A stretch of 64,000 nucleotides of DNA from Macrostomum lignano. Lineage: Eukaryota. Under the pieces are notes generated by a model, which saw nothing but the letters and a program-made list of their open reading frames with translations, was not told the DNA's origin and made no database searches. The DNA lies in NCBI GenBank assembly GCA_002269645.1, contig NIVC01001116.1, positions 1-64,000 of the forward strand, written 5' to 3'. The position numbers were made by a program, and so were the translations under genes. Below, piece by piece: positions 10,210 through 44,971 of the stretch. Each line of letters starts with the position of its first letter. Position 1 is the first letter of the stretch.

Positions 10210-10512
10210 TATCCCGTGGCCTGAGTGAGGAAGGCAATGTCCTTGCTAGTCACTATTTGTGGCGACATCTCCAAATTGCGTGAAACCCGTCATACAGCTT
10301 CAAGTACCACTTAAATTGAGAAATCTTTTGAAGGAACAGAGGTAACTCCTCTTCCCAAAGGTAAAAAGCTTGAAGACATGGTGGCAATGCGCAGCCAAGC
10401 TCCTAAGTATTTTAAATATAAGGAGAAGGTTCAGAGAGCAGACGGAGATGGGCGGTAATTATCGCCGCTTAAGGTGTGCTCCAGCCTCTTTCGAAAGATT
10501 GAGGGTAAACTA
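10210..10512 (+). ncRNA. Group I intron, IC1-like, 303 nt, no internal ORF
   Basis: P1 CAGGU/GCCUG with U.G at the splice site; P3 CATCTCC 10266-72 / GGAGATG 10444-50; P AAATTGCGTGAAA; Q GCGCAGCCAAGCTCCTAAG; R GTTCAGAGAGCAGACG; S CTTAAGGTGTGCTCC; P7 fully paired with compensatory changes; P5abc with A-rich bulge and GAAA/GTAA loops; P9 GAAA hairpin. Removal restores NFTGPGTRL in frame. Confidence 0.93.
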
Positions 10513-11661
10513 CCCGGCACTCGCTTAGATTTGAGATTAAATCCTGACAATACTCCAAAATCTGATTCAATTCCAATAAATGGGATTGATTGGTTAGCAT
10601 ACTATCACGACTTAGCATATAGAGATGCTGACAAGAACCCGCCCGAGGAAGCATTAAGATTAAAACATGAAGCCGATCAAAAAATGATTCAAGGATTAGA
10701 TAACTTGCAGGGATTATCGGTAGGGCAAAGATTAACTAGGTGGATGGTTAAAAAGATTTTGCAGTCTAAAGTTAAATTTGGTTTGGGAATTAATTATAAT
10801 CAACATGGAAATAATTGTGTCGAGTGTTTATTATTAAGTGGTGGTGGGTTAAGTTCTGATGAGGCAAAGATTCTTCATAAAGAATATCGAAAACCTAAAT
10901 TTTATAGAAAAATCATGAACTTCAAAAAGAATGAAATTTGGTATGCTGATTTAATGTCGATGCCGAACGAAAGAGGATATAAATATATCTTAACCATATT
11001 AGATGGTTTTACTCGATACGCGTGGGCTGTTCCTTTAAAATCCAAAAAGGGAGAGGAGGTTGCTGCTGCTTTTAGAAGTCTTGGAGAAAAAAGCGAAAGA
11101 TTGTGTGTTGATGAAGGAAAAGAATTTTACAATCCTCATATGTATAAATTGTATCATTTTGAAAAAGGAAAAGAAAGGAAAAAAGACGCGAATGGGGAGT
11201 ATATTAATAAAATTTATTCTATTTATGGAGAGAGTAAAAACGCATTAATAGAAAGATTTAATCGAACTTTAGGTAAGAAATTATGGTTTCAGTTTAGTCT
11301 TAATGGTAACCAAAAGTGGGTAAAAATATTACCAGACGTAGTGAAAGATTATAACAATTCATATCATTCAGCTATAAAGATGACTCCTCAACAAGCTTAT
11401 AACAATCCTGAAAACGTTAAAGTTACTTTTGGAAAATTTGAAAAAAATAAAAAGAAATCTTTTAAGGTTGGTGATTCTGTTTATATCTATAAATGGAAAG
11501 ATAAGTTTGAAAAAGGAAGAAAAGGATATTGGAAGATAAGTGAGAAATTTACTATCAGTAAAGTTTTAAATACCAATCCTACAACCTATATAATTGCTGA
11601 TAATGACGGTGAAGAAATATTGGGTTCGTTTTATGAGAACCAACTAATATCAGCGAACTAA
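10513..11661 (+). CDS. PLA2-integrase ORF, exon 2 (PLA2 catalytic half fused in frame to rve/DDE integrase)
   Basis: PGTRLDLRL...PINGIDWLAYYHDLAY (PLA2 HD dyad), then without a stop LHKEYRK...WYADL...ILDGFTRYAWAVPLKSK...VDEGKEF...IERFNRTL...YNNSYHSAIKMTP. Confidence 0.92.
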   Translation, partial: PGTRLDLRLNPDNTPKSDSIPINGIDWLAYYHDLAYRDADKNPPEEALRLKHEADQKMIQGLDNLQGLSVGQRLTRWMVKKILQSKVKFGLGINYNQHGNNCVECLLLSGGGLSSDEAKILHKEYRKPKFYRKIMNFKKNEIWYADLMSMPNERGYKYILTILDGFTRYAWAVPLKSKKGEEVAAAFRSLGEKSERLCVDEGKEFYNPHMYKLYHFEKGKERKKDANGEYINKIYSIYGESKNALIERFNRTLGKKLWFQFSLNGNQKWVKILPDVVKDYNNSYHSAIKMTPQQAYNNPENVKVTFGKFEKNKKKSFKVGDSVYIYKWKDKFEKGRKGYWKISEKFTISKVLNTNPTTYIIADNDGEEILGSFYENQLISAN

Positions 11662-11671
11662 GTTCGAACAA

Positions 11672-11896
11672 TTACTTGAGACAACATGGTAGTAAATTTT
11701 TTATAACAAACAAAAACAATATTATTACTATAATTGTTACTAATATTATTATTGACATTTGTTCAACTGTTATCAAACTTAAATTTTCATTAAGTTCATT
11801 AATTGGAACATTTCCGATGTAGGAATAGTTTACCTTCATTTTTTTATATATATTTTTCACAATAAATGTCGTTTCTGTTATAGAATAATAGTTCAT
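11672..11896 (-). CDS. Small membrane protein (one C-terminal TM helix, CC tail)
   Basis: 74-aa ORF with IIILVTIIVIILFLFVI hydrophobic run. Confidence 0.5.
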   Translation of the reverse strand: MNYYSITETTFIVKNIYKKMKVNYSYIGNVPINELNENLSLITVEQMSIIILVTIIVIILFLFVIKNLLPCCLK

Positions 11897-11912
11897 TTTT
11901 TAAATATTTTTT

Positions 11913-12227
11913 TCACATAAAAATTTCACTTTCATTCTCTGAATCGCTGGTTTCATATGAACTATTTGTTGATTCGGAATCTGTTGATCTAACCTCCCAA
12001 TCATCCGAATTTAAATAATCTCCAAGTTGAAATATTAACTCACCCTCTTGTTCTAAATCAAACATCTCATCTAGCTCTAATGGATAAAGTTTTAGGTCGT
12101 GCTTGTCGTCATATTTTAAATAAACTTCATCAATTATTCCATTCAAAATATGTTGTTTTATTATCTCTGCATTTTTAGCAACAGTCTCAAAAGTATCACT
12201 AACAGAAAAGGTGTAAACTCGGGTCAT
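11913..12227 (-). CDS. Small acidic hypothetical protein
   Basis: Intact 104-aa ORF with AAAAATG context; Ser/Glu-rich tail. Confidence 0.5.
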   Translation of the reverse strand: MTRVYTFSVSDTFETVAKNAEIIKQHILNGIIDEVYLKYDDKHDLKLYPLELDEMFDLEQEGELIFQLGDYLNSDDWEVRSTDSESTNSSYETSDSENESEIFM

Positions 12228-12281
12228 TTTTAGTAACAGAAAAAGACCCTTCGCGCCTGCGGCGCGGGCAAGGGGTTATAG

Positions 12282-12551
12282 AGTAGTAGTATAGAAAAAG
12301 ACGCTTACAGATCAGACCTTATTTTAATGGCCGTTTTTAAGGTCTTAAGAGGGGGGACGCGAGGGGGGTGTTGGGGAGTGTTTGGAAGTGTTGGGAATGA
12401 TTTTTATTGTTAGGGGTGATTATGGGTGATTAGATGTATTAATGGTGTTTAGATGTGTTTTTTTATTTACCCCCCGTGTCCCCCCTCTAGACCCTCAAAA
12501 CGGTCATTAAAAAAGTGCTCTGGGTCTAGAAGCGTCTTTTTCTATACTACT
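12282..12551. repeat. Polinton right terminus, bounded by its own imperfect inverted repeat of about 90 bp
   Basis: AGTAGTATAGAAAAAGACGCTT at 12285-12306 and its exact reverse complement AAGCGTCTTTTTCTATACTACT ending at 12551; similarity continues inward. Confidence 0.85.
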
Positions 12552-15500
12552 CGGAACGACGCACATCCGGTTGCACTCAATCAGCATGTCGAAGTACATT
12601 CTTCTCCAAACTATCTTGGACTTGCTGGCAATTTTGCTCACTCTCAGGCTAAACAGTGCAATCAGCAGATTAACCATGACGATATTGACCAGCAGAAGGA
12701 ACACAAACATGAAGCAGTTGTAGAACGCATCACTGCCTTTGTCATAGGCCATGGAGCCGATTTCATACCCAGTAAGGTTGGTACTGTTCACGCTATTGAA
12801 TTTAATCTCGTCGAAATTAGTGAACATTAGCTTCAGGGGAAGCGTAAACACCTGGACAAGCGACAGCCAGTAGTTCGCTCCCGCTGGAACAGGGAACAGC
12901 AGGTGAAAGAAGAAAATCCCGAAGGAATATATCACAATCAGGATTATTGACAGAAACGGTAGCAGATCCAGATATAACAATTGAACCAGCATCATAACCA
13001 TAGGCCCCGTCTTCTCGAAGAACACCAAAAGTGAAATCAGACGAAATCCCCAAATTAGGAAGCTGGCAGCTGTGATCATTCTACCGGAGTAATATCCATA
13101 AAGTAGAACCCCTTGAACACTAGCAAAAAAAGCAACAGCATTAGCCAATTCTAGCCAGGAGAGGGCTCTGTTGGTGCTCAAAAGAGGCAGAGAAGACCTG
13201 GATAGCACACGAGAAAATAACACAAAATAATATGAAGATCCATACACAATGAAGGCCGAAATCCAAATTCGATAGTCAGTATTTGCATTACCATCCAATG
13301 AAGAAGTCTCATATGTCATCGGAATTCCAATACTTAATACAGACAGTAAGATTAACGCAATTAAGTCGGACACGCAGTACGAATAAAACTTTGCACGTGG
13401 TGAAGCAGCTGGATATCTCTCTAGCCTAACACTACCGATGTCTTTCTTAACATTTTCATCGTTAGGCAGCAGATTCCTAGTCAGGCTGCTGTGCCGGTTC
13501 TTCCACTCCGTGTCGGCCAGCTTGGTCATGCACTCACTGACAAACAGCTCGTCACAGCCAGCTTCCAGCAGCAGTCGCAGCACTGTGCATGGCTCGATAG
13601 CATCCTTCTTAGTCTCGCCAAACATGCCCGACGTCGGGTGCACACAGGTAAAAAGTGGGCCGCTACTTTTTGGCTCCATCCGGCCGCAAATATAGTCGAA
13701 GAGCAGTTGCTGCTCATAGGCGCTGGCATTGCGAAACATTTCATCAATAGCGTTGAATGCGATGCCTTTGAGCTTCTGTCTCAGTTCCTTAATCTCGTCG
13801 CGCTGCTCAGGAATCTCCTTCAACTTTCGCTTGAGCTCAACTAGCACTTTCAGGCATGTAGGAATTAGCTCGAACTGTCTCGTGAGCACTAGGTCCGGTA
13901 TGATCTTGAATTTATTGAGAAACAACGCTGTCTCAACTATGGACATTTCTGTTGCCTGAGTAAGATTTTCAGGATGTAAAATAGATGCAGCCAAGTACTC
14001 AGTTTCCAGGCTGATGAAGCCAATGCTTATTGCACTACGCAGAATCTCAGGTGCGTCAAGTTCAATGGAAGTGACAAGAAGGTTTACACCTGAGAGTGCT
14101 CTCTGATGTTGCTTAGGGACACTCGCTGATACACTGACGGAGCTCAGAACTCTGTTGGCCGTCTCCCTATCAGGCAGATCCAATGCTCGCTTCGGCAAGT
14201 CCAGAAGTCTCAGCAGGTTTGTCTTTCTCCCGCCACTGCTCAGAAATGCTTTCTCAACTGCGCCATCCTTTCCACTGTTGCAGGCAAAGTCGATCGGTGT
14301 GAGTCCGTCATGGGTCGGTGAGGACAGCGACAAGCCCTTTTCAATGAGAAACTTAAACGCAAAGTGAAGACAAGTCGCTCCTCTGTGAGTTCCTGACGAG
14401 ACTGTCAGTGACAGTAGTTCGGATGCTTCGATGCCAGATAAGCAGGCAAGTGGCTCAACAAAGTCTTTCAAGCGGTACCTGGTGGCAGCGAGATGAACCG
14501 CATGCGTCCCAGTCGAGCTGTGAAGCATCGCCTTGATCAGCTTTCCAACATTGTTGGTGTCCGCAGCCGCTTCTAAAATTTGCTTCAACAAGTTCTCTCG
14601 AATTTCGCACACTTGGAGACAAGTCTTACCAATGCTGTTCTCAGTGTCCGGATTTACTCCGGCTTTGGCAATGAGCTTCAGCGATTTGATAAAGGCTTCT
14701 ATGCCGCTGGTTGCAGCAGTGTTCATGAAGAGTGCGTGCATCAGGGTGTTCCCGTCAGCGTCAACGCGAGTCATTTCGTCGCTTGATTTGAAAGCCTCGA
14801 GTGCAGCCACGTTCCAGTTGAAGCTCGCATAGAAAAGCGGGTTTCTCCCTGATGCGTCCAAGGACTTCAAGGACTTATCGAGTACGCCAGGGAAATATTC
14901 CTTCAAGAAATTGTAAGACTTGACGTTCGCGAAAGCAAGATGCGCCACGGTTTGCTGCTTGTTATTTCGCCAAAAGATGCAGTCACTCGCGAGCTTCTTC
15001 ACAGCGGCATCAGTGAAAGTGAGCATGCCGCGTGAGATAGCGAGATGCAATACTGTGTTGCCTGCGTCATCTGCGGCATTGAGAACAGCAACCCTGGCAG
15101 CTGGTAGCAGCTCCAATAGAGTGGCCTCATCTTCACGGTGTGCCAAGCAATGCAGCACTGTCTGAGTGCAGTGAGAAGTGCTTCTGAACAGTCTGTCCTA
15201 TGGGCCATGTAGTGCATGCACGTGTTTCCAGAAGTGTCCTGCAAGCTGACGCATGCGGTATTCATTGCATTCAGCAGTCGCAACAGCACGCTTGGCTGGC
15301 AGTGCACCGACGCCAGATGTAATGCCGTCTCTGACTTGTTGTTTAACCAGCAGGGGCATCTGAGATTTCTCAGCAGTGCTGCTTTATGCTTATCTAACAT
15401 GGCGTTTTTCATAGCCTGCCTCTCAGCATCCTCAAGGACAGCTAACATTGCGTTATCATTATTTTCGTTCATAGCGGCATAGTGCATCCATGTGTTTCCA

Positions 15501-16702
15501 TCCCAATCAACCAGGCCAAACTTTTGGGCATCTTCCGGGTTCAAAGGCAACTCTGAAGACAACCTGAGCATTTGTTTTATGGTATCTACTCTGCAGTTTT
15601 GAAGCACCAGCTGCAACACAGATTGCTTTTTGTTATTTTTCCACCGAAAACTCTTTGGAAAAAACTCAACAGCCCGAAGTACAGCCTCGTCTGCACCTCG
15701 CATGGCAGCATAGTGAATGCTGGAGTTTCCCTGTTGGTTTTTCGTTTTAAGATGCTTTTTGAGACAGCCACTGCGTGTGTGACCAATCTCTAATAAAGCC
15801 GGTATTCTCTCTGGACTGAACTTCTCAATCGACATGTGCAGCATTGTTTGTCCAGCGGAGTTCGGAGCAAACAGATCACTGCAACTGGTGGGTGTTGAGT
15901 CAACCAGCAGACTCAGCACGTCCTGGTGCTCTGTGTTTGAGGCGGCATAGTGCGCTATGGTGTTTCTGCGTGACGTCTTCAGCGTCTTGAGCAGTTTGGA
16001 AACCATTTCACCGCTATCTATGATGTCAGAGAGGATTTTTCTCACAGTGCCAGTAGAATGGCAACCAAGCGAGAGGTGGAGCGGCGTGACCGACTTGTAG
16101 TCTTCTTTGAGCAGAGCTCGAGACCTGAACAGTCGCAGAATGTGCAGCAATGTGGACTCTCCATCGGTGCTCATCGCTGCATAGTGAGCTGCAGTTCGTC
16201 TGCTTTTATCGTGAACATGCTGACCCGAAAAATCATTGGGTATTTGCATGAGCAGTTCATTGGCTTCTGAGAATCTACCAACTTTTGTCAAACGAATAAT
16301 TCTTCTCATAAAGTCCTTCTCTGCACAATCTTTGAGCAGCTCTGTTGCTTTCTGTGAAGCTTCGGTTGAATCTAGATAGTCGCTTGAAGAATCCTCACGA
16401 GCATTCATAGTAGTGCCATCTTCTTGGTCCAACTCGGCTTCTGAGTCGCTACTGTCGCAGTCCAGTTGAAGGACGGCATTGGATTTCACATGCAGACCAG
16501 ATTGATGAAGTTCAGTGGGTTTCGGCAGCTGTGCTTCATAATCTTCACCGTCTCGCTGATGGAACTGGGCTGACGATTTTTTCTCAGCGAGGCTTTCCTC
16601 GTTAGAGCTGCCGCCAACGAAGCTCGCATCGACGTCTACAATTGTCAACTCCCTGCCGTTGCGGCTGCCGTCACTGCTTTCTCTTGGTATCTCATCCGCC
16701 AT
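12552..16702 (-). pseudogene. Intronless ankyrin-repeat TRP-family (TRPA-like) channel gene, frameshifted near 15160 and cut by the Polinton just after the S6/TRP region
   Basis: Many ankyrin repeats (GNSSIHYAAM, GNTVLHLAIS), 6-TM region, FGPMV-like TGPMVMML, VNLLIALFS...IVWRR; the frame runs into Polinton TIR sequence after RMCVVP. Confidence 0.85.
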
Positions 16703-18619
16703 CCTCTGCTGATAATGAGACGGCGCTCTCTGTGAGAATTTGTCAATTTATGGTTTTTATAAATTTTTTCATTGGCATTGACATACATTATCTTGCCTAC
16801 CATGTCATGCCATAAGGGAAGTTTACACAGACAAGAATACAAATATTTGAGAAGACTTAAGTGAAGCCCACAAATAGTTCATAGTAATCCCGTGCAGCAT
16901 TCTGACGTCCGCTAACGTACCAACGTAACTTATGCCGATGGTTGACACACGTAATGGATGACGACGTTGTACGTCGGTAAAGTTTTCCTTTTCCAGCGAT
17001 GTCGACAGACGTCAGATTGCTGAACGGAATGCTTTTTTACTTTACTGCTTCTATTTCTGCCACAAGTACTACCCTTCAATGACTATTAAATCCGTAGAAT
17101 AGTGTGTCTGCCCCCCAAAAAGAAGACGTGGCTGTCACACGAGTTCAGACCACCTTTTTGAAGTTAAATGTGGCACCGAAGAGCTGCTTTGAGCAGAAAG
17201 AACAGAATACTAGTGTTTTACACAGTTGTATATTTGTGTACGGCATGCCTAATGCATATGTTGTAACAAGGACCACTGTAGTAGAAGGGCAGTGGTCCTT
17301 GTGTTGTACATGTGTGCCTGAAAGCTATTTGGCATCATTTGCAGTCACACATGTTCTTCAGCATGCATTATTTTAGAAGGTACATACAGTAACTTCTCAT
17401 AAACTTTTTAAGTCACAGAACTATACCTGTTGCGAACCGAGTCAAATTAACTCGTAATAAGCACCCTGAGCTGCAAAGATTGCGACTAAACTAATCACCG
17501 TGAACAAAGACACACGCTAGCAACCAGAACCGTAAGCACGTATAAAACGGTAGTTTATTTCAAAACGATTATACCTAATCTTACCCGAAGTTTTATCGTA
17601 GTTCTTGTACTCCTAAAGTGACTTTACATGCACCTTAAAAGAGTGATTGAAAGAGAAATCTTGCGCACCGACTGTTGTGCTTTTGTTTTTGCTCCAACAG
17701 CTAAGCTAAGGACAAGTGTGATATGCAGTGTTTATTTTATGCAGATGCAGTAAATGTAAAACAGCTTCTATTTTTACTGCCAAACTTAAACTGCAGCGCT
17801 GCAGTGTTTTGGGGTTGCAGTGCTGATGGAGAGAGATTTTTTAGTTGCATAGTGCAGCCCTTCATCAGTAGTGCGTCAACTTGTTCATCTTATTATGCTC
17901 AATTACATTAATGAGTCCTTTTTGCATTGTATTGTACACTTATAGCTTCGAAAAAAACTTGCTTCAGAAACGCCGTACGCCGTACGCGCAGCAGTACAGC
18001 AGTTCTGTACTCTCTGCTTTTAGATACATTCTCACGGCTCAATTCCATGCTTACCATAGTAGCGAAAGAATAAATTGGTATAAGATTATTTAGTGTAGAT
18101 TCGCACTCACGCAATAAACCTGTCTGAATTTCTACAAGAGACAAAGTGCAATTGAGTGGCGTGGCTGTGGTGACTGGCATGCCTAAGCATTTATTCGACA
18201 ACCGAATAAATGCTAGCTTATTGGGAGATGCTGCGACCTCCCGATGATCTACTAGCCTTTGATAAAGATGATTCTCGTTAGCCGGAACGAGTGTTGTCAA
18301 CTAGGTGTTTTTAGAGCTCTATCATTCACCGTAATGTTGTCTATTAGAAGACTCTAAGATATACTAAAGAGTTTTTGAGATGTTTTGGAGGCCAGGTTTG
18401 AAAAGAGTCATCAAGACTTATTCCACGCTGAAAAGGGTGTCTTGGAAAAAAACTAGGCGTAGAGAACACGCGCCTGTGCTGGGTTTACTTGTCTGCAAAG
18501 TCTGTGGACGAATCCACTGCGATGTTCTTGGGCTGATCGCATAGAAAAACATAGCTGGCAACACTTCAGTTGAAGCGACATTTGAGTTTCCGTTTGCATA
18601 CGTTCTGCGCAATCAGAAG

Positions 18620-20312
18620 GCCAATACTGTCATCATGATCCTGGGCGAAAAGTTCTTACCTGAGTATGGATTTCCCAGCCAGATTCATCCGGACCAAGGA
18701 AAGCATGAACTTCTCTGGCAAATTTTTCAACAAATGTGACGCGACAGCTTCACCACAAAAAACACCGTAAAATTATAGCTAAAACGGCCATGTGGATAAC
18801 TTAAAAAAAACAGTTAAATAACGTTTTAACCGTTTATTTAAATGACCGGGTATTTATACAGCATTACCTAGTTCACGAGAAAATACTAGATGCCAATAGA
18901 CAATACTGAATCCGCCGAACTAAAATTAACTCAAAGAAGCTCTCACCTGGCGACCTCGTCTCCCTCAACAATCCTGCAATATATCCAAGCTGGGAAGCTC
19001 CAAAGTTTAACAGATCGCTCAAAGCAGTTTACGAAGTTTCTTCAGAAGATTGGTGAAATTTAATGCAAGATTTGTTCCTGTTTTGGGATTTCACGAACTC
19101 GAAAGGATATTATTCTACTAGTGCATCGGTGGAATCATCTGAACGTGTTTCAAGGAGATTACGGTACATCCGGAAGAGCCATCAGGACTTCGTAGAGCGT
19201 TGTACTGGATGGTTGCCTCTTGGTGTCCTTGAGGTCTTGAGGCTGGAGGAAGACGACGACGAGAATAAGGCGGTTGGCCCAAATTCAAGCTTGGCAAGAT
19301 TCTGCACCTCCACGAAGCGTGCCGTCAACACGCGGTGCCAAGCGGGCAACCGGAGCAACCCGGTTGGCAAAGCAGAATCGGGGGGGGGAGAGAGGCCCGT
19401 AGCCTCGGCGTAACAGCCGCGGTCTATGGGCAAACCTCCTCGCAACAGAGTGGCTTGGACCTAACCGACCCAGGCACCTCTCGAACAACAGTAAGGTTGA
19501 AAGCTTTGCCGAAGAAGTCCACTGCGGAGAGTGCAACAAGTGGATAAGCAAGTCCAACCACGCGCGGCATAGGAAACGGTGCAAGGAAAACGGAAGGAAA
19601 CCAGAGGCGGGCGCGACACCGGACGAGAGGGCAGAAGAAGCAGCAGTACCAACGGGGAGAGGCCAGCAGACGACGGGGATTACGGCGCGGATCTACAAGA
19701 GCGCCAGAGCTCCGTGCCCGGACTGCGGGAGGATGCTGGCCCGCACGAACATGGCCAGACATCGAAAGACCTGCCAGTGAGTCGGCGGCAGAGCGTCCAC
19801 GCCGCGAGGCGAGAAAAGGACTGAAGAAGAAGAAGAAGGCCCAAATTCAAGTTTAGTTCGATGAAACTTGCTACTGACAGGCGCTCCTCGCGCCAATTCG
19901 TTTATCTTATCAGAGCTGGCAGAGATAGGTGTCACCCGGATAGGGATAGGTACTCAAATCTAAGGGCAAAACATACGTAAATCGTAATCACCTGGTCTTA
20001 AATCTCAATATCTTTCTTGTAAAAAGGGTCAACGCAATTTTTATATTGTATTGGGTCAAGGAAGGAGTTTGAGTCACCGTTGTGAGTAAGGACCCAGCCT
20101 GACTTGGTAGTTGTGGGAGCGTCGAAAAGGATCATCCTCCTAGAACAGCTAAGAGAGACTGTATGAGGCTCACTCGAGTGCCGTCAAATGAGTCAGGGAG
20201 TGCGCGCCGCGTCACAGAGCTGCCAGCCAAGCGACCGCGGCTGCACTACAGCTCAGGCCAGCCCGCTTGAATAAAGGCTCTCTACGTTGCAGCCACCTTT
20301 TCGGTCTTCACA
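18620..20312 (+). mobile_element. Degraded 3' remnant of a Ty3/Gypsy element (integrase fragments, PPT-like tract, probable 3' LTR 19930-20312)
   Basis: FLPEYGFPSQIHPDQGK and PGDLVSL...APKFNRSLKAVYEV resemble the integrase at 59600-60250; AGAGATAGG precedes TGTCAC; AATAAA near a ...CACA end. No TSD found. Confidence 0.55.
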
Positions 20313-21826
20313 CCGCTCTATTGCGCAAACTGTGCGGGCTCAAAAGACAGGACTAAGCGCAACACTAAACGCTACAGCCCCTTGAAGCCCCTGATAGCTT
20401 CAATTATAAAATCAAATATATATTTACTCGTAAATGTGCCTCTAGCTGGTGGCACTCACAACACACCGTATTGCCATGACGATCTCCACCAATGCCAGTA
20501 TGTTCCTGTATGTCCATGCCAATATTAACTTACTGGTGTGGCGAAAATAGCTTTTTCTTTACGAGTTCGAGTGCTACGTCTACTTCTAAGGCTATTTCGA
20601 GAATGAAAGGTAAATGGTATTCAATGAACGGCAGTGTATAACGTTGTAGAATGAACTTAATTGTGGGATAATGATGAAATAGATTGTTCGAAGTAGAGGC
20701 CAATGGTCTCGTTTATAGGCTAATTCAATAGTTCAAATGCATATAATGCAATACCGTACGGTATTGAAGTGCAGTGACAGGATTGCTCGTATAACTAAAT
20801 AAACATAAACAGTCTCAAGTTAAACCCTCTCGTTAAACTAACTTAACTATTTTGGTTCCTAGGTTTGTAATGATTCAGCGACCGTCTTACGGCCTGAAGG
20901 CCAATCGTTACAGCACGAAATCATCACTAACATCGACAGAGGAAAAGCGAGAAAACAGAAATTTTTGTAAATATTTAAATAATACCAATTTCTTAGAACG
21001 TACGCATTACAAGCTATAACAAAGAAATAATGAATATAATCAAAATCAGCTCATAGAGTATGAATGCCAATGTACAAGAAAAGAAGACAATCAAACACTT
21101 TAAAATAGATTGATATTGTTACATTAATAAAATACATACAACAAAAACCTACTCGCGACACTTGATACTACTTTGCATTTTTCAGTTTGACTATAGCTTT
21201 ATCCTTCAGAATAATTCGCTTACGATACGATTAAAGAAAAAAACAACTGCGGTACTTTTTAAAAGTAATATGCATAACATTTTTGCTGTATAAAGTGATT
21301 AATAAGTTCGAAAAATACATTTTATAAAGATATTGATCAAAGAATTTTTTTCTATAAAGACGACACGCAAATTAGTATACTCGTAATGTATTAGTTTATT
21401 TAATATTTATGTCAAATGTCAATTTCTCAAATGTGTAGGCAACAGATATACTTCCGTTGTCTTTCGCTAGTTATTTTTGAAATCTACTCTAAAGGCCGGT
21501 TCACAGCTTTGCAAGTAAAATACTGCTCAACTCCGTGTACAGTTGGTCCAGGCCTGTTAAAAATTGATTTGAGCAATATTTGACCCACAGAGAAACTCGC
21601 ATTAATATTTGAACCAACCTTAACAAACTTACTACTCAATAAAAATTAGTCCATAGTTTAGGGCAACATAAGCAGAAACTGAAAAACGTGTATCGTAGCC
21701 CCGTAGCACTAATTCATTTCTTCACAAAACTGCAATTAAAAGCAATCAAAGGTACTCTATATAGCGTTTTTTCATTCTAAAGCCATTACTAGTTAATGCG
21801 TCGAAAAACAATTTGGTCACTTGCTT

Positions 21827-24800
21827 TCATTCAAAGAAGTGCTCGGCAGCAGGTCTTTTAAAGTCGTAGTCCTCCAAAACGACGCGTCCTTCTTTGCGCA
21901 GCTTTTTTAGCTCCTCTTTGCAGAAATTCCGGTGCTGGTGACTGTCTGAGTAGTTGGCTAAAGTGAGCAGCTCCTCCAAATCTGCATCTGCTTGAATCTC
22001 AGTATACCAGTCGTCGACACAGACTTCTCCAGCCCCCAGAAGTTCTGCTTGTAGACTCCAAAAAAGGCATCGAAAGTTAATGTAGACGTGGGATGTTTTA
22101 GATTTTTCAGATAGTCTGGCTGTAAACAGACTTTGCGTAAAGTTCGCCAAAAAAGGAAATTGAAAGCCACTTTTGCTTGGAAAGCAAAATCGCCACGCCC
22201 AGTCTGCTTCGTTGTCCCACTTGATGCCGTCTCTAACTGAAGTAGGCTGCCAACCGCGCTGAACTTTGTGACCATTAAGACAACTTAAAACAATGTCTGC
22301 TTGATCCAACCTACCACTCTTGCAATATGCCATTATCTTCAGGCAACAGACTGCAGAGTGGCAAATTTTGGGCAGCGTTTCTAAACGCTCAATCAAACGA
22401 TCAACGCTCGGACACTCGCCATCATTGGACAAATCTGTGAGAGTTTGCCAGATTTTTTCGTACAAGTTAGCCAGCAAGTTCACCGTGCTGTCTTGATGTC
22501 TTTTCGTTTTAAGAGCGCCTTGGCGAACACGCTGCAATGGCAGAAGAGTGAACGGGTGAAACCTGAACTCTTGCGAGCTCAACGGACGCAAAAACTCTAG
22601 CATCGGATCAAACACCGCCCAGGTCCTTTTTTGGAGGTCTTTCAGGGATATTTCCGCTTCCTTTTTTGAGTCTTCGAATCCGTACCCGAGGCCAGCATTT
22701 TTAATGTAGAGCTGTGCGCTTGGGCACATCGAGTGCGGCATAACGACATCCTTGGAAATACTCGCCGATAGAAACTCGATCGCCATACCAAGTGCTTCGT
22801 GGAAAAGGCGAGCCAAATTTGTGGGTTTCCACACCGATTCCCCCGATTCTGCGTGTCGCGCAATTAAATGAAACAATAGCGACTTTGCGTGGTACGATTT
22901 ATAGTAATCTTTTAATGGAGTGTTCTTGAAACAGTGCTTGATGATCATCAGTAAGTGCCCTTGCACTTCGTAAAAGCCTCGTACTAGTCTGTTCTCCTGG
23001 CTGTTAAAGCTGATTCGCAGCTCACACGTGCGTCCTGGCCTCGAAGCCCGGACGAGATTTTCGGGCTGGGGGTGCAATAAGGATAAGTCTCTTGTGCAGA
23101 CAGGAAAAGCGCAGCAGAAATCCATGCGGGGAAGAACTCCTTTAGCAGGGGAAGTCTGTGCAGGTTGACATCCTGTGTGGGGTTGAAACATGTTAATAAC
23201 GCTAATTTATTTATGTTCATATTTAGGCAGTTATTAAGCCTAATTATAAGAGGTCCATTTCGGTCAAGCTCTCATATCAATGGCAGTAGTCAAAAACTAC
23301 TATGACACAAAACATCGCACAGTTTACAACTTTGAAAGTAAATGCCGGTTCACATTCCCGCCAGTAGCTTCGCGGGTCAAAGACTGCTCAAATCAATGTG
23401 CAGTTGGTTCAGACACGTTTTTAAAAATGATTTGAACAATCCTTCAACTGCTGTGCTACTAGCGGTAATGTGAAACGGACTTAAGAGCACTGGATTATTC
23501 TCTTCAGGTTCCATTAACAAATTAAAGCATACAGTAGTGCTCATTTTACATAACAATTCTATAATACGCTAGAATTCAATGTGAAAATCATAGTTTTCTT
23601 ACCTACAGGAGCCGAGAGCGGCACATGACCCTCGATGGGGCTCCCCAAGTTCTGCTGTCCTAAGCAGGAGCAGAAATCTTCTAGGAGTAATACGTATCCG
23701 TTTATAATTTGTAGCCAGTCGATGTCGGAATCCGGTGACACCATTCTGTCCAAACAGGGTGGAATCATCCCATAGCCTTCGGCTGTGCTGCCAGCAATTT
23801 CCATGTCCTCGCCAGTGATCGCCGACGCTAGTTCTGATACGAAGCTTGCCATTCTTGGCAGACAGACCACCCGGTCTTGCGTGAAGCCCGACTGAGTCAG
23901 CGCCTCGGTCAACGCGGCACTTTTTTCGACAAAATAATTGCTAAGATCAAAATTCGGCCAAGAGCTGAAATCGGAAAAGTATGAAATAAAAAACCAATGC
24001 ACAAACTGACATAAACAGCTACGTGAAATGAGCTACATATACGACGTACGAGCGTATCTCTCACCAAAGCAACTTGAGCACAACTTCGTGCTTAGCCGAT
24101 TCCGCCAACTGTGCACAGCTTCGGCCAGCGCTGTCACAGTGGTTCACGTCAGAGCCCAAGTCTAGAAGCATTTTCACTGCTTTCTCTTTACCGTGCAAAC
24201 ACGCTATCGATAGGGCTGTTTGTCCGTTCGCATTTGTCTGAGTCACCGATGCGCCATCTTCAATCAGCGGCAATATCAGGTCGCTACGTCCGAACTTTGC
24301 CGATAGCATCAGCGCCGTTTCACCAGCGCTATTAGTGCGGTGAACTTCTAGGAGATGTGGTTGCATGCGATGCGCAAGAGTTATGTATCCTCTCTCGATG
24401 CATGCATGAAATGTTTTAAGCAACCGGCTCTGACTAAACCTTGAGCAAAATCTGTCAAAGTCGTGACTGTTAGGCTTTGTTACTAAGGCGTTATTTAGCG
24501 TACGCTGAAAATCTTCGGCTTCAATTATCCAATTCGCCTCCGTTGGGATATTCCTGAGTAACGTAAAAATATCCTGAAATTCATGTGTCAGACTACGAGT
24601 AATTAGTTTACACAGAAAGTCAACTCTATTTACAGCGCTTATGCTTGATTTCAGAATAGGCTCGACTGCGTCGACCTGGTTGGAATAGATGGCTTGTTGC
24701 ATCACATCCTGGAATCTTTCAGCCTCGTCGTTATATTGTAAGGCAAACTCATTTAGGCAAGTCCATAATCCAAGACTCGCTGCTTTTAATGACGCTCTCT

Positions 24801-27800
24801 TGAAACATTCCTTGCGACTGGAATACTTCGAAAGCTTTTTTATTGAAGCAGACAATTTTGAAGCGAATTCAACGTCTTCGTTGCTCGTCCACAGTGCGAT
24901 CTCGCGTTCAGCGATTTCCTGATAGACTGCATCTTTAATGTTGCAGTTTCTAATAGAATCGACCATTCCTTCTGTGTACTGGTAAAGTCGAAACTGGATG
25001 GCAAACCGGGCAACTCTAACGCGATACTTGTCGGCGTCCGGACTCTGATAAGAGTTGAAAAATTGCACAGCAGTTTCCAGCCTCTCTTGCTCATAAATTA
25101 GATCGACTCCGGCAACTAAACAATGCTCGATCAGATGTTTCAGTGTTTTTTTAATGCAAGCTATGAACATGGCAGCTAATTTGGCTTGGCCTTGGCTCAG
25201 CATCAGCCGCACCTCATCAGCACAACAAATGCATATAATGCGCTCATCTTCAATGAATTTCAAATAATTTTGAGCCTGCACCCACAAGTCGCATCTTAGG
25301 CAGGCACTAACTAATGCTTTGCAAACCTGGTTCCGTAATTCTGGATTATTGCAGATGTCTTTCAGAACTTTTTTGAACAGTTCCCACCTGAAGCCAGAAT
25401 TATTTCTTAATTGAACTATTGCCAACATGAGCTGCTTAACAGTGTGTAAGCCACAAAGAGCGCTAGCTGTGCGAATGGCAACAAGAAGACATTTAACTTG
25501 TAGAGCCTCAGAGAAGCTCAGTAACAACCGACAGGCAGTGTCATGGAAGCCGCTGCACACAGCTGATTTTACAGCCTCAACACAGCATTTGCCGCACATT
25601 TCATCGTCGCTGACCGAAGTAAATATAGTTTTAATAGTGTCGATGCAATCAGCAGCTGCGGCACACCTGATCGCCGTTAGAGGGCGAGGATTAAGAATTC
25701 CCCTTGCAATTATTATGCAACACCCAAGCTTCTTCTGGCTTGTGCAGATCTCGCGCACCAGTGCCTCGGCAGTGTCCATGTAGCCAAAGTTAGCAGCAAT
25801 TTCAGCAGTTTTTGCAAGTGCTTCGTCTCGCCTATTCGAATCGTGTATACGCTGTAGAATTTCTCTAACAGCCTCTAACCGACCACTACTTGCTGCAACT
25901 TCTGCTTCAGTCAGGTACCAGTCTTTCAGTCGGTCTGCCACATCTTGCTTTCCTTTATCAGACAGCTTTTGCACCTTTCTAGAGCGCCAATTTTCTTTCT
26001 TGTCCGTGTCAGCCATTCCGCTCAGAAACAAGTTTGACATTTCGGCCTGATCAAAGTCGATGGCAAACTCAGCAGCAGCAATAAGACTCTGATCGCGCTC
26101 ATCTCTATTCATAATGCTTTCTGAAATCTGTTTCGCTGTGTACCACAGCTTCCGCCTCACTAAAAGCTTCACTTCCTCGCGCCGGATGCCGTCTTTAAGA
26201 TCATCCTCTGCGTCTTCAGCTAGATAGTCAGCCACAGTCAGAAGAGTCCAGGCTTTTCGTTGCTCCGCATCAATTGGACTCTGGCAGCCGACAGGGGAGT
26301 CAGTGGGCACAAACTCTGGGTGAATTTGCGTTATTGACTGCTGCTGCTGTCTCCCTGCTGGTGACTGTTGGCAGCGCTGGCAGGAGGAGACAGTGGCCTT
26401 GGCCAACTGGCAATTGATCTTTGATTTTGCTCCGGCATCTTCGATAATTGAAGACAACGCTCTGATGCAACCTTTGCATCCACTGATTTTATTAAAAATA
26501 CTCTTAAGTGTATCAGATCGTTTGCTTGCACAGGAAATCTTTGCCAGAACAGATTGTGCCAGAATCCAGCTCCCCTGCTCAGCAGCTTGAATTGTCAGAG
26601 AACTACGGCACACTTCTATCGTCTCAGCCGGGACATTGTTAGCAAAAATCGCAAAAAAATTCTCGACGTCTGAAGAATCCCATTTACGAGTATTAATTTT
26701 CGAAACAAAAGTTTTAAGAAACTGAGACCGCTGCTGAATTGTCAGCTTTTGGCAAAAATAAGATGCAATGTCGAATTGACCCATTGACGCAGCTTTCTGG
26801 GCGAGATCGGCGCAGCTTTGCCAAAGGTCGGGGCCCGGTGAACTGGAATCTGAGATTATCTCCCAGCAGGCGGTAGCCAATTCCATCCAGCCATTAATAG
26901 CAGCGAGAGTTGCTAACTCGAGACATTGCTGTCTTCTTGTCCGCTCGTTTTCAACCCGTCGCAACAAGTAGGCAGACGCTTCCCACTGCTGAGCATCTAC
27001 GGCTTGTTTTGATGCCAAGATGAGACCTTGATCGCGTTGCGCAGAATTCGCGATGCCCTTCAGAAGCCTGTAAATGTATATGTAGATCAATGACATTTTT
27101 TTACTTTAATGGTATTAATTAAATTAAACACATTTCAATAGAACTTGGCATGTACGAGCTACATGTAAAACTGAAAATTAAGGACTCTATACATTCGTAT
27201 ACCGTGCAAATTTTGTTGGAGGTCAGTTTAGCAACGAAATTCATAATTTTCGAACTATCGAATTTCCAAACGGAGCGGTTATGCGTCCTGCATGTGCAAA
27301 CTCGATTTAGAAGGCGGCTGTAAAAATGCAGTGATATAGTGAAATTTGCACAATTTGCGACAGCAGCCTTCCTGTCTACAGTGTTAGGCAACATTCCGTT
27401 AATGTGCGTTCATATTCCTTACCTGGTATCAGCGTTTAACGGACTTCGTAAAAACTTATTTTGATTAACTTATTAACACATTCACAATCGAAATATTGGA
27501 AAGAAACTTTTTGGCGTTAATTTTTTTGTTTGAACAAGTTTTATTTTATGAATAGCGTTGGGTTTGATAAAAATTTAAATATTCATTATAGCACTTATAA
27601 AAAAATTCTGTAAATATTCGTAAGTAGTAGAATAGGGGGCATCCGATGTTTATGCTAGTCTTACGTGGCATAGGGTATATTTTCATGATTCGATCACGAA
27701 AATAAATTGATAGAATAGGCCGTATGAGTAAAGCTTGTGCTCTGAGTTGGAGGAGCAAGTGCTCAGAACTGAGAAATAGATCAGAATTTGAGCAACCAGT

Positions 27801-32673: not shown

Positions 32674-32917
32674 AGCTTGAGGAATCTTTAGTTGGAAAAA
32701 TTATTTCTATCTTACCATTGGAGCTTTTAAACAGAAAGGTGTTTAAATAGCTTTTCGAATTGTTTACGCGTGACTCTAATGCAATAACTATTTATAGCGC
32801 CCATCAGACGTTACTTTTAAAGTTAATGTACGTTTTTGCTGTAGCTCCTGCATGAGCTTCCGGACTGCTTAAGAACCTAACAGCGTATTTTGTTGTTATC
32901 GTGTTATTGTGTTGTAG

Positions 32918-33205
32918 AGGATTGTAGCCTAGTGATTTAAAGGTAGGAGGTTCGATGCTCGACCACAGTGAAACAATTTGTGTCCTTGAGCAAGACACTT
33001 AAACCATGCATTAATTTTTGCTTCAGTTCACAAAGCTGTAAAATGGGTGCCAGCATGAGCTGGGATAACTGAGGGTGTGTGGCGACCCCCCCCCAGTCCT
33101 TGGACTGAAGAGCCGTACGCAGCCTTCAGATGCGCCGCGCAATAGCTGCGGCTGAGCTGTCGGTTGCACAAGTGGCCCAATCGGGGCAGGTGTAATCAAT
33201 TATTT
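32918..33205 (+). mobile_element. tRNA-derived SINE (copy 1, head partly deleted)
   Basis: TAGCCTAGTG and GGTTCGATGC boxes followed by GTCCTTGAGCAAGACACTTAA...CTGTAAAATGGG core-like block; inverted homologue at 37381-37677. Confidence 0.75.
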
Positions 33206-33284
33206 TTATTTTTATAATTATATTATTATTATTTCTATTATTATTATGTTCCTTAAGCTAGAGAAGGGTTTATATGCGGCCCAG

Positions 33285-40637: not shown

Positions 40638-40694
40638 CTGGGACACCGTCAGGGGGGGAGCATGATTTATTAGTCAAAGGCGACAGACAAATCG

Positions 40695-40815
40695 CTCATA
40701 CTCATGCTCATACTCATGCTCATGCTCATACTCATGCTCATACTCGTGCTCATACTCATGCTCATACTCGTGCTCATACTCATGCTCACACTCATACTTA
40801 TTCTCATGCTCATTC
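40695..40815 (+). repeat. (ATACTCATGCTC)n simple repeat
   Basis: Visible. Confidence 0.85.
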
Positions 40816-44760: not shown

Positions 44761-44971
44761 ATTAAAATACTATTTATAATACAAAATATTAGCTTGCCAA
44801 CCCATCCCATCCGCAATGAATAGTGGAGACTGATTGTATCGCAATAAAAACGGCCTGGACTGACACCTGGGGCGCCCAAGCGAAAAAAACTGCTACTACT
44901 ACTATTACTACAAGTAGTAGAACACAGTAAATCAATTTGACTTCGCTAGGTTTTTCTTCAATCGTTTTACA

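What the first reader, a model, noticed from the sequence alone, without database searches (positions are those of the whole stretch)
10210..10512. IC1-like group I self-splicing intron inside a protein-coding gene of a Polinton integrated in an animal nuclear genome
Seen: removing 10210-10512 joins ...AAC TTC ACA GGT to CCC GGC ACT CGC, restoring the PLA2 Ca2+-loop motif NFTGPGTRL in frame. The insert pairs as a full group I core. P1 is exon CAGGU with IGS GCCUG (10219-23), U.G at the junction. P10 is 3' exon CCCGG with 10214-18 (4/5 pairs). P3 is 7/7 bp. P7 is G(A)GAGCA 10434-40 with UGCUCC 10477-82, changed from the usual CAGACUA/UAGUCG yet fully paired and keeping the G-C guanosine-binding pair. 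P5abc (UUCAAG/CUUGAA, A-rich bulge, GAAA loop), the CCUAAG receptor-like segment, P8 and a GAAA-capped P9 are present. Established: IC1 introns are typical of protist, algal and fungal nuclear rDNA; in animals group I introns are known mainly from mitochondria of early-branching lineages, not nuclear protein-coding genes. Inference: a virus-like element has carried a ribozyme intron into an animal genome; I do not know whether this has been reported.
Basis: partly seen in the sequence, partly recalled or inferred. Interest (0 to 1): 0.95.

Follow-up and report, generated by a model that had tools for sequence, protein, structure and literature searches.

The report
Ribozyme intron in flatworm-integrated virus
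A genuine group I (ribozyme) intron sits in the phospholipase-integrase gene of a Polinton-like virus that inserted into a Macrostomum flatworm chromosome; such introns were already known in giant viruses and protist-integrated Polinton-like viruses, so the new points are the animal host and the gene, and this copy lies in a decaying element.

Summary
Window 10210-10512 scores 64.2 bits against Rfam RF00028 (threshold 50, E 8e-16). Its removal joins ...NFTG to PGTRL..., which intron-less homologues read without interruption.

Five metagenomic or viral relatives carry a homologous intron at the same codon junction, and 24 related loci lack it. Across the six copies, 91% of 60 proposed base pairs hold and 29 pairs show compensatory double changes.

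Three relatives carry an Eco47II-like PD-(D/E)xK nuclease ORF in the P2.1 loop. The window copy has no ORF.

The host gene is a parvovirus-type PLA2 fused to an rve integrase, in an AT-rich Polinton-like element (window 1-12551). Host homology (97-98% to Macrostomum lignano NIVC01000911.1) begins exactly at the outer end of a terminal inverted repeat, and the reference locus is an empty site. Integration into an animal genome is therefore well supported.

- The element is decaying: three genes are broken.
- The intron departs from consensus at one near-universal nucleotide. Whether this copy still splices is not shown.
- The IC1 assignment is untested.
- RF00028 introns in protist-integrated Polinton-like viruses were reported in 2025, and the same core type is abundant in giant-virus contigs.

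Verdict: a new member of a known kind, of moderate to high interest.

The parts
1..12551 (.). AT-rich Polinton-like virus element (26-39% GC against 41-57% in the host DNA). It is cut by the window start, and its right end is at 12551.
   Evidence: Composition. Gene content. Host homology starts at 12552.
10021..10209 (+). Exon 1 of the PLA2-integrase gene. The part 10114-10209 is homologous to intron-less relatives and ends ...NFTG. The upstream ~30 codons are not shared with relatives and overlap the end of the HNH-like ORF.
10210..10512 (+). Group I intron, 303 nt, with no ORF.
- Internal guide sequence: 10219-10223
- P2 hairpin: within 10228-10248
- P2.1: 10249-10263
- P3: 10266-10272 with 10444-10450
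- P4: 10277-10282 with 10388-10393
- P5: 10287-10291 with 10380-10384
- P5abc: 10297-10376
- P6: 10394-10430
- P7: 10434-10440 with 10477-10482
- P8: 10452-10468
- P9: 10485-10504
   Evidence: RF00028 at 64.2 bits. Covariation. MFE fold reproduces P1, P2.1, P3-P6, P8 and P9.
10513..11661 (+). Exon 2. It holds the rest of the PLA2 domain (PGTRL..., HDLAY), the rve integrase core and a chromo/SH3-like C-terminus. The reading frame is intact.
   Evidence: PF00665. Homologues carry PF08398 + PF00665 (+/- PF00385). Single frame with no stops.
9474..10103 (+). Free-standing HNH / endonuclease-VII-like ORF (209 aa), immediately upstream of exon 1. A candidate free-standing homing endonuclease.
   Evidence: PHROG 1035 'endonuclease VII', E 5.5e-11. 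Homologues sit at other positions next to intron-less alleles in L003 and L027.
8775..9446 (+). Conserved element ORF (223 aa) of unknown function. Its homologue directly precedes the integrase gene in the intron-less relative L003.
7267..8739 (-). Major capsid protein gene (double-jelly-roll type), intact.
   Evidence: Full-length alignment to the L002 PF21738 protein, E 1e-9..
6495..7186 (-). A32-like packaging ATPase gene, broken: 1 frameshift, and 0-1 stop depending on the comparator.
   Evidence: PF04665, weak. Two frames against 243-aa homologues.
5601..6311 (-). Minor-capsid (penton)-like gene, broken: 5 in-frame stops.
   Evidence: tblastn against the 263-267-aa ORFs of L002 and L004.
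4947..5345 (-). Adenain/Ulp1-like cysteine protease ORF (H...D...Q-x6-CG), intact.
   Evidence: 45% identical to a 139-aa ORF of L002. No HMM hit.
23..456 (+). Remnant of the 3' part of a large ORF family (850-1000 aa in relatives, with an endonuclease-VII-like insert). Broken by 1 frameshift and 1 stop.
12285..12551 (.). Palindromic terminus of the element. Outer inverted arms are 12285-12311 and 12525-12551, and inner arms are 12348-12366 and 12470-12488. The outer arm ends exactly at the host junction.
12507..16702 (-). Host ankyrin-repeat / ion-channel-like gene of Macrostomum. It is truncated by the insertion, whereas the reference locus continues 672 nt further.
   Evidence: 96% identity to BOX15_Mlig004315g1. 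Alignment to L086.

Best explanation
Window 10210-10512 is a bona fide group I intron.

Family. It belongs to a family of mobile introns that target one site: the Gly|Pro junction of the Ca2+-binding loop codons in the PLA2-integrase gene of Polinton-like viruses.

How the family works:
- The RNA folds into the P1-P9 core. An internal guide sequence pairs with the last exon-1 bases (U.G at the splice site), and a G-C pair in P7 forms the guanosine-binding site.
- Excision of the intron restores the reading frame.
- Full-length members carry a PD-(D/E)xK (Eco47II-like) nuclease ORF in the loop of P2.1. This is the inferred homing endonuclease that spreads the intron to intron-less alleles during co-infection.

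The window copy. It is an ORF-less derivative that keeps only a 5-bp P2.1 stub.

How it reached the flatworm. It arrived passively, when the virus-like element that carries it integrated into a Macrostomum chromosome and cut an ankyrin-repeat gene.

Present state. That element copy is now decaying. Whether this intron copy can still splice is open.

Shown: ribozyme identity, conservation of the structure, the exact exon junction, the intron-plus / intron-minus distribution, the nuclease fold, host identity, and the anatomy of the insertion junction.

Inferred: catalysis, homing by the nuclease, loss (rather than never-gain) of the ORF, and the timing of decay.
For: Ribozyme identity:
- RF00028 at 64.2 bits in the window and 65.3 bits in relative L001.
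- Six homologous introns sit at the same codon junction.
- 91.3% of pair cells are paired, and 29 of 60 pairs carry compensatory changes, against 2-8 in slid controls.
- The P7 G-C pair is invariant in 6 of 6.
- P1 follows the exon: CAGGU/GCCUG in the window against UUAGGU/GCCUAA in L002.
- The middle P10 pair changes G-C to U-A together with a synonymous CCC to CCA change in L001.

Junction: it is read continuously in 24 intron-less loci and in proteins such as P0001 and P0004-P0006.

Sporadic distribution: the nearest host gene (L003, 72% aa identity) has no intron. The intron core is closest to that of L001 (78%), whose exon 2 is only 68% identical.

Nuclease ORF:
- It is bracketed by a 10-bp (L001) or 6-bp (L002) P2.1 stem.
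- 21 of 23 family members hit PF09553.
- The AlphaFold model (pLDDT above 90 over residues 1-165) matches EcoO109I, the DdmD nuclease, McrC, BamHI and XPF.

Host and integration.

Decay: three broken genes.

Wider family: at least 173 near-full-length core matches in 108 IMG/VR loci, many of them giant-virus MAGs.
Against: - No RNA evidence of any kind was available, so splicing is not shown for any member.
- In the window copy one near-universal group I nucleotide departs from consensus, while all five relatives keep it. One substitution lies in the tetraloop-receptor motif, and one P5b pair is open. A review (PMC3679873) does report a natural intron with a departure from a universal consensus nucleotide that self-splices efficiently in vitro, so this is not decisive either way.
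- The window copy's count of private substitutions (13 of 112 eligible columns) is no higher than in relatives, so there is no general sign of relaxed constraint on the ribozyme.
- Only one end of the element is visible. No target-site duplication can be read, and no read-level support for the junction was available.
- None of the window's proteins was found in any other assembly.
Confidence: 0.82

Rival explanations
1. The copy is still a working self-splicing intron, and the element (or at least this gene) is transcribed in the flatworm. A ribozyme intron would then be operating today in an animal nuclear protein-coding gene.
For: - 59 of the 60 helix pairs are intact in the window copy, and private substitutions are no more frequent than in relatives.
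- Exon 2, the capsid gene, the protease gene and the HNH-like ORF are intact.
- A natural intron that departs from a universal consensus nucleotide is reported to self-splice (PMC3679873).
Against: - Three other genes of the element are broken.
- One near-universal nucleotide and the receptor motif are off consensus in this copy only.
- No transcript evidence exists, and the window's proteins are absent from all other assemblies searched.
Confidence: 0.2
2. The ORF-less intron is maintained or spread by the adjacent free-standing HNH / endonuclease-VII-like gene (9474-10103). This would be 'collaborative homing', as described for phages: the nuclease cuts intron-less alleles near the insertion site, and repair copies both the gene and the intron.
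For: - The HNH-like ORF ends about 100 nt upstream of the intron insertion site.
- It sits between two genes that are adjacent in the intron-less relative L003, so it is an insertion.
- The concept is documented for phages (cited in PMC11296320).
Against: - Homologues of the HNH-like ORF lie next to intron-less alleles, at different positions, in L003 and L027.
- The other ORF-less copy (L004) and the ORF-bearing copies show no such neighbour in the DNA held.
- The cleavage specificity of the nuclease is unknown.
Confidence: 0.15
3. The join at 12551/12552 is an assembly chimera or contamination. The intron-bearing element would then belong to a free virus, or to a protist in the flatworm culture, and not to the animal genome.
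For: - The element is much more AT-rich than the flanks.
- All close relatives come from environmental metagenomes.
- The reference assembly locus lacks the element.
- No reads were available to check.
Against: - Host homology starts exactly at the outer end of a 27-nt terminal inverted repeat that occurs nowhere else in the window.
- Three genes carry stops or frameshifts, as expected for an endogenised copy rather than a replicating virus.
- The empty site in a 97-98% identical locus is what an insertion in one homeologue or allele gives.
Confidence: 0.07
4. The resemblance to a group I intron is fortuitous, and the insert is another kind of sequence (a spliceosomal intron, a small transposon or a decayed fragment).
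For: The whole-window Rfam scan at gathering threshold returned nothing.
Against: - A full-length model match at E 8e-16.
- A homologous, covarying structure in five other loci.
- No GT...AG boundaries.
- The exact exon junction is confirmed by 24 intron-less alleles.
Confidence: 0.01

Closest known systems
RF00028 group I introns reported in Polinton-like viruses integrated in protist genomes (Paulinella micropora, Rhodomonas lacustris, Desmodesmus armatus; Microbiome 2025, PMC12220804)
   Same: The same Rfam family, a similar size (309-376 bp there, 303 bp here), and residence in an integrated Polinton-like virus next to capsid genes.
   Different: - The host here is an animal (a flatworm).
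- The interrupted gene is identified here as a PLA2-integrase. The paper describes only an unannotated ~50-aa ORF.
- The homing-nuclease type, the intron-minus alleles and the covariation were not described there.
- Whether the two sets are the same intron family was not tested, because the paper's supplementary tables were not searchable for it.
Group I introns of giant viruses (chlorovirus PBCV-1 TFIIS intron, Mimivirus and Bodo saltans virus RNA polymerase introns; PMC7019647, PMC2688009, PMC5871332)
   Same: - Self-splicing-type introns in viral protein-coding genes, often with homing endonuclease ORFs.
- A profile of the window's core finds at least 173 near-full-length matches in 108 IMG/VR loci, many on giant-virus MAGs and on contigs up to 1.26 Mb.
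   Different: - The carrier here is a small integrating element, not a giant virus.
- The nuclease is PD-(D/E)xK (Eco47II-like), whereas Bodo saltans virus introns carry HNH and GIY-YIG types.
- The chlorovirus intron is classed IB in the literature. The subgroup of this one is untested.
Nuclear rDNA group IC1 introns (Tetrahymena type; review PMC3679873)
   Same: - Architecture: P2 plus P2.1, an extended P5abc scaffold with an A-rich strand, and a GAAA loop on P5b.
- A CCUAAG...UAUGG motif in P6 of the relatives (as read in L001, L002 and L063). From general knowledge this is the 11-nt tetraloop receptor.
- ORF-less copies are interpreted as remnants of mobile ones.
   Different: - The host gene is a protein-coding viral gene, not an rRNA gene.
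- There are no peripheral helices beyond P9.
- No subgroup model was run.
[quoted passage not shown] 2009, as cited in PMC11296320)
   Same: An ORF-less group I intron lies next to a free-standing HNH-type nuclease gene.
   Different: The two are not associated in related loci, and nothing is known about the cleavage site.

Membership tests
Group I intron (Rfam RF00028) | Covariance-model score at or above the curated gathering score | tested here: met
   64.2 bits against 50, full model 1-253, E 8.1e-16. Relative L001 scores 65.3 bits. The default-filter scan of all 64 kb missed the match.
Group I intron (Rfam RF00028) | Conserved core helices P3-P9, including the P3/P7 pseudoknot, supported by covariation | tested here: met
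   60 pairs in 11 helices. 91.3% of cells are paired, against 40-50% in slid controls. 29 pairs have double changes, against 2-8. 0 of 500 shuffles reach the observed values.
Group I intron (Rfam RF00028) | P1 formed by an internal guide sequence with the 5' exon, with U.G at the 5' splice site | tested here: met
   C10205-U10209 pairs with G10219-G10223. All five copies that have a 5' end show the U.G pair. The guide covaries with the exon in L002.
Group I intron (Rfam RF00028) | Guanosine-binding G-C pair in P7 next to a bulged nucleotide | tested here: met
   G10436-C10481 with bulged A10435. The pair is invariant in 6 of 6, while the neighbouring P7 pairs covary.
Group I intron (Rfam RF00028) | Full set of near-universal consensus nucleotides | tested here: inconclusive
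One departs from consensus in the window copy, while the five relatives keep all of them. A natural precedent that still self-splices is reported (PMC3679873).
Group I intron (Rfam RF00028) | Precise excision restores the host reading frame | tested here: met
   Phase-0 junction NFTG|PGTRL. 24 intron-less loci and many proteins read it continuously.
Group I intron (Rfam RF00028) | Guanosine-dependent self-splicing | not testable with these tools
   No RNA data were available.
Subgroup IC1 | P2 and P2.1, plus an extended P5abc scaffold with a tetraloop-receptor contact | tested here: met
   P2 within 10228-10248, P2.1 at 10249-10263, P5abc at 10297-10376 with a GAAA loop, and the CCUAAG segment in P6. 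The window copy has one substitution in the receptor motif.
Subgroup IC1 | Peripheral helices beyond P9, and a match to a subgroup-specific model | tested here: inconclusive
   Only about 8 nt follow P9, so there is no room for further helices. No subgroup models are in the tools. Published virus introns are classed IB.
Mobile (homing) group I intron | Intron-encoded homing endonuclease | tested here: not met
   The window copy has no ORF. Relatives L001, L002, L063 and L208 carry an Eco47II-like PD-(D/E)xK ORF in P2.1.
Mobile (homing) group I intron | Intron-plus and intron-minus alleles of the same site among related hosts | tested here: met
   6 intron-plus and 24 intron-minus loci. The nearest host gene is intron-less.
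Polinton / Maverick (polintovirus) | Protein-primed family B DNA polymerase | tested here: inconclusive
   None lies in window 1-12551, but the element is cut by the window start. Relative L207 has PF03175. Relatives L002 and L208 show none in the DNA held.
Polinton / Maverick (polintovirus) | rve integrase, adenain-like protease, double-jelly-roll major capsid, minor capsid, A32-type ATPase | tested here: met
   - rve integrase: PF00665.
- Protease: motif and homologues, but no HMM hit.
- Major capsid: aligned to a PF21738 protein.
- ATPase: PF04665, weak.
- The minor capsid and ATPase genes are broken.
Polinton / Maverick (polintovirus) | Terminal inverted repeats and a target-site duplication | tested here: inconclusive
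   Only the right end is visible. It ends in a 27-nt repeat that is also present inverted 213 nt inside. The left end and the duplication lie outside the window.

The most novel reading that the evidence does not exclude
The intron copy is still catalytically competent and the PLA2-integrase gene is transcribed in the flatworm. This would be the first self-splicing group I intron operating in a nuclear, presumably Pol II-transcribed, protein-coding gene of an animal, and this Polinton-like lineage would be a current route by which ribozyme introns enter animal genomes.
Probability: 0.15. Interest if true: 0.85.

Novelty: new member of a known kind. Interest (0 to 1): 0.6.

Why it matters
Reviews state that all known nuclear group I introns interrupt rRNA genes of microbial eukaryotes (PMC3679873, PMC8395846). 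A 2025 survey added Polinton-like viruses integrated in protists.

This locus extends that to an animal chromosome. It also names the target gene (PLA2-integrase, at its Ca2+-loop codons), the nuclease that probably moves the intron (Eco47II-like PD-(D/E)xK), and a set of intron-plus and intron-minus alleles.

The same ribozyme type is abundant in giant-virus contigs. That links giant viruses, Polinton-like viruses and, through integration, animal genomes in one pool of mobile introns.

Two practical points follow:
- Gene callers split such genes. P0002 and P0007 start inside the intron.
- Default Rfam filters missed a 64-bit match in a 64-kb scan.

Tried and rejected
- Whole-window Rfam scan at gathering threshold: no match. 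The match appears only when less sequence is given.
- Rfam on L002 at E <= 0.01: nothing, although nhmmer shows a homologous core (270 bits). Its longer P6 and different P9 probably cost score.
- Exact-sequence look-ups of five window proteins in public assemblies: none on record. This gave no second copy and no transcript evidence.
- The listing of cluster members on NCBI and Logan integrase homologues: no names or organisms.
- Pfam, PHROGs and NCBIfam on single intron ORFs, and a PDB sequence profile: only sub-threshold or no hits. The family-wide Pfam scan and the fold search resolved the question.
- Supplement search of PMC12220804 for RF00028: nothing in the stored text.
- Yamada et al. 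1994 on chlorovirus introns: not held.
- Subgroup assignment: no subgroup models were available, and the GISSD paper gives no usable criteria.
- L207: exon-1-like DNA followed by two Eco47II-like ORFs and a protein-primed polymerase, with no ribozyme core. Not pursued.
- A second intron that would hold the HNH-like ORF was considered. It was rejected because no further core match exists in the window and the ORF's homologues are free-standing elsewhere.
Full report
OBSERVATION

Exon 1 ends ...AAC TTC ACA GGT at 10209, a 303-nt insert follows (10210-10512), and CCC GGC ACT CGC starts at 10513.

A scan of the whole window against Rfam at gathering thresholds returned nothing. When 9900-10800 was searched with laxer filters, RF00028 (group I catalytic intron) matched 10200-10503 on the + strand. 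The match covers the whole model at 64.2 bits (gathering score 50) and E 8.1e-16. The first result was therefore a loss to the speed filters.

- P1 (C10205-U10209 with G10219-G10223, U.G at the splice site).
- P3 with 7/7 pairs (10266-10272 with 10444-10450).
- P4, P5 and a P5abc extension with a GAAA-capped P5b and an A-rich strand.
- P6 with a CCUAAG segment.
- P7 (G10434, 10436-10440 with 10477-10482, bulged A10435).
- P8 and a GAAA-capped P9.

A minimum-free-energy fold reproduces P1, P3-P6, P8 and P9. It adds a P2.1 hairpin at 10249-10263.

THE HOST GENE AND THE JUNCTION

The exon-2 translation carries an rve integrase core. It has 458 homologues, most of which carry PF08398 (parvovirus-type phospholipase A2) followed by PF00665, some with a chromodomain.

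Intron-less homologues read ...HLPxYN(F/Y)(T/L)G PGTRLD... without interruption. The window's exon 1 ends NFTG and exon 2 begins PGTRL. tblastn places the two halves at 10114-10209 and 10513-10701, 303 nt apart.

The intron therefore sits in phase 0 between the Gly and Pro codons of the Ca2+-binding loop. The HDxxY catalytic motif (HDLAY) follows in exon 2.

RELATIVES WITH AND WITHOUT THE INTRON

Two predicted proteins (P0002, P0007) start with residues translated from the 3' end of an intron. Their contigs (L001, L002) carry homologous introns of 835 and 852 nt at the same junction.

A search for loci encoding relatives of the protein gave 8 viral and 74 metagenomic loci. A profile of the ribozyme core found three more intron-plus loci: L063, L024 (cut by the contig end) and the viral contig L004 (302 nt, no ORF). 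24 loci read straight across the junction. A further intron-plus element, L208, was found through the intron ORF.

The closest host gene (L003, 72% amino-acid and 76% nucleotide identity) has no intron. The window's ribozyme core is closest to that of L001 (78%), whose exon 2 is only 68% identical. This sporadic distribution is what a mobile intron gives.

STRUCTURE CONSERVATION

The window-derived structure was laid on an alignment of the six cores:
- 91.3% of pair cells are standard pairs, against 40-50% when the 3' partners are slid by 1-3 columns.
- 29 of 60 pairs carry changes on both sides, against 2-8 in the slid controls.
- None of 500 column shuffles reaches the observed values.

P7 alternates between GAGCA/UGCUC and GACUA/UAGUC, while its G-C guanosine-binding pair is invariant.

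P1 follows the exon sequence (CAGGU/GCCUG in the window, UUAGGU/GCCUAA in L002). The middle pair of P10 changes from G-C to U-A together with a synonymous Pro codon change in L001.

The relatives carry CCUAAG...UAUGG in P6 together with the GAAA loop on P5b. From general knowledge this pairing is the 11-nt tetraloop receptor and its loop.

HOW THE FAMILY MOVES

In L001, L002, L063 and L208 an ORF of 160-233 aa lies between P2 and P3. It is closed by a P2.1 stem of 10 bp (L001) or 6 bp (L002), and its 3' end runs into the ribozyme core.

Evidence on the ORF's identity:
- Single members hit PF09553 (Eco47II restriction endonuclease) only below threshold.
- 21 of 23 family members hit it at E <= 1e-3, the best at 4e-9.
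- An AlphaFold model is confident over residues 1-165 and disordered over the tail that overlaps the ribozyme.
- Its best PDB matches are EcoO109I, the DdmD nuclease domain, McrC, BamHI and XPF/Hef. All are PD-(D/E)xK nucleases.

This is the inferred homing endonuclease.

The window copy keeps only a 5-bp P2.1 stub whose outer bases match those of L001. That fits loss of the ORF, as in the invasion-degeneration-loss cycle described for rDNA introns (PMC3679873). Never having had the ORF is not excluded.

THE NEIGHBOURING HNH-LIKE GENE

ORF 9474-10103, just upstream of exon 1, matches PHROG 1035 'endonuclease VII' (E 5.5e-11) and, weakly, HNH families.

In the intron-less relative L003 the gene homologous to 8775-9446 directly precedes the integrase gene, and the HNH-like homologue lies downstream. 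In L027 it is on the opposite strand.

It is therefore a free-standing, mobile nuclease gene that has landed next to the intron here. Collaborative homing is possible, but the distribution does not support it.

HOST AND INTEGRATION

The 883-aa ORF at 12507-15158 (-) is 96% identical to Macrostomum lignano BOX15_Mlig004315g1, and all other hits are from that species.

Window 12552-27256 aligns at 97-98% identity to contig NIVC01000911.1 of assembly GCA_002269645.1. The homology stops exactly at 12551/12552. In the reference the ankyrin gene simply continues for 672 nt, so that locus is an empty site.

Window 12525-12551 is the inverted copy of 12285-12311. A second pair of arms lies inside, so the last 267 bp form a palindromic terminus whose outer end is the host junction. 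The 20-nt terminal sequence occurs nowhere else in the window.

This is the anatomy of an integrase-mediated insertion in one allele or homeologue, not of a random misjoin. The other end of the element lies beyond the window start, so no target-site duplication could be read, and no reads were available.

WHAT KIND OF ELEMENT, AND ITS STATE

Window 1-12551 is 26-39% G+C, against 41-57% in the host DNA. It carries:
- a major capsid gene that aligns over its full length with a PF21738 double-jelly-roll protein of L002;
- an A32-like ATPase gene;
- a minor-capsid-like gene;
- an adenain-like protease ORF;
- the PLA2-integrase gene.

No protein-primed polymerase is visible. One relative (L207) has one, and others instead have 850-1000-aa ORFs with an endonuclease-VII-like insert. 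'Polinton-like virus' is the safe name.

Compared with relatives, three genes are broken:
- the minor-capsid-like gene: 5 in-frame stops;
- the ATPase gene: 1 frameshift and 0-1 stop;
- the remnant of the large ORF at the window start: 1 frameshift and 1 stop.

The capsid gene, protease ORF, ORF 8775-9446, HNH-like ORF and integrase exon 2 are intact.

In the intron itself 59 of the 60 pairs hold. Private substitutions (13 of 112 eligible columns) are as frequent as in L001 (13 of 116) and L002 (14 of 117). Three departures are specific to this copy:
- one near-universal group I nucleotide departs from consensus, while all five relatives keep it;
- one substitution lies in the receptor motif;
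- one P5b pair is open.

A natural rDNA intron that departs from a universal consensus nucleotide is reported to self-splice efficiently in vitro (PMC3679873). The activity of this copy therefore cannot be decided from sequence.

WIDER FAMILY AND LITERATURE

The six-sequence core profile gave 173 near-full-length matches in 108 of these loci. Many lie on giant-virus MAGs and on contigs up to 1.26 Mb. The ribozyme is thus of the type common in Nucleocytoviricota.

Published context:
- A group IB intron in chlorovirus PBCV-1 (PMC7019647).
- Endonuclease-bearing introns in essential genes of Bodo saltans virus, proposed to act in competition between viruses (PMC5871332).
- RF00028 hits in Polinton-like viruses integrated in Paulinella, Rhodomonas and Desmodesmus, with the interrupted gene left unannotated (PMC12220804).
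- Reviews stating that all known nuclear group I introns interrupt rRNA genes of microbial eukaryotes (PMC3679873, PMC8395846).

Searches for group I introns together with Polintons, virophages or nuclear protein-coding genes found no report from an animal nuclear genome. That is absence from the held library, not proof of absence.

VERDICT

The subgroup, the present activity and the strict 'Polinton' label remain open.

The finding is a new member of a known kind. What is new is the animal host, the identified target gene and the nuclease type. What is not new is the presence of group I introns in such viruses.

Noticed in passing
window 10030-10100: A GC-rich stretch holds two perfect hairpins, CGAACC-AAA-GGTTCG and CGTTCC-TTCG-GGAACG (UUCG loop). 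It lies where the end of the HNH-like ORF overlaps the unshared N-terminal codons of exon 1. Function is unknown. It gave only a chance-level Rfam hit on the minus strand.
   Followed up: no
window 12285-12551: The element ends in a 267-bp nested palindrome, with 27-nt outer arms and 19-nt G/C-rich inner arms. It could be a fold-back terminus, or a miniature two-end derivative abutting the element.
   Followed up: partly
window 4305-4775: A tandem array of a 57-nt unit (8.3 copies, 79% matches) lies inside the element, between the protease ORF and the 300-aa ORF at 2875-3777.
   Followed up: no
window 1-64000 (method): cmscan with Rfam's default filters on the full 64 kb missed a 64-bit RF00028 match. 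The match is found at once when 0.9 kb is searched. Pipelines that scan long windows may under-count such introns.
   Followed up: yes
L001 1490-2662; L002 10001-11191: Gene callers start the integrase protein inside the 3' end of the intron (P0002 MCSSLFRKIEGEL..., P0007 MCTSTSQRRM...). Database proteins of intron-plus elements therefore lack the first part of the PLA2 domain.
   Followed up: yes
L207 531-5770 (ENA ERZ25070786 ctg135151l): In this relative an exon-1-like segment is followed by two Eco47II-like ORFs and then a protein-primed DNA polymerase (PF03175). No ribozyme core and no integrase remainder lie in the 11 kb held. It may be a rearranged or differently organised element.
   Followed up: partly
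L087-L206 (IMG/VR), e.g. L161 on a 1,259,197-bp contig: The same ribozyme core type is very common in giant-virus contigs. Some loci hold 6, 10 or 19 copies within about 14 kb.
   Followed up: partly
window 54634-59748: Ty3/gypsy-like retroelement ORFs (gag-like, reverse transcriptase, integrase) in the host DNA.
   Followed up: no
window 30746-50285: The host DNA is packed with satellite arrays, with periods of 15, 19, 20, 23, 26, 35-37, 78 and 156 nt. One is a 15-nt array (35761-36918) that is open in several frames.
   Followed up: no
window 23-456; L005 11-2887; L008 92-2740; L208 390-3416 and 5122-7863: Relatives encode 850-1000-aa proteins whose only recognisable domain is an endonuclease-VII-like insert (PF02945). 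They may be the replication protein of this lineage. The window holds only a broken remnant.
   Followed up: partly
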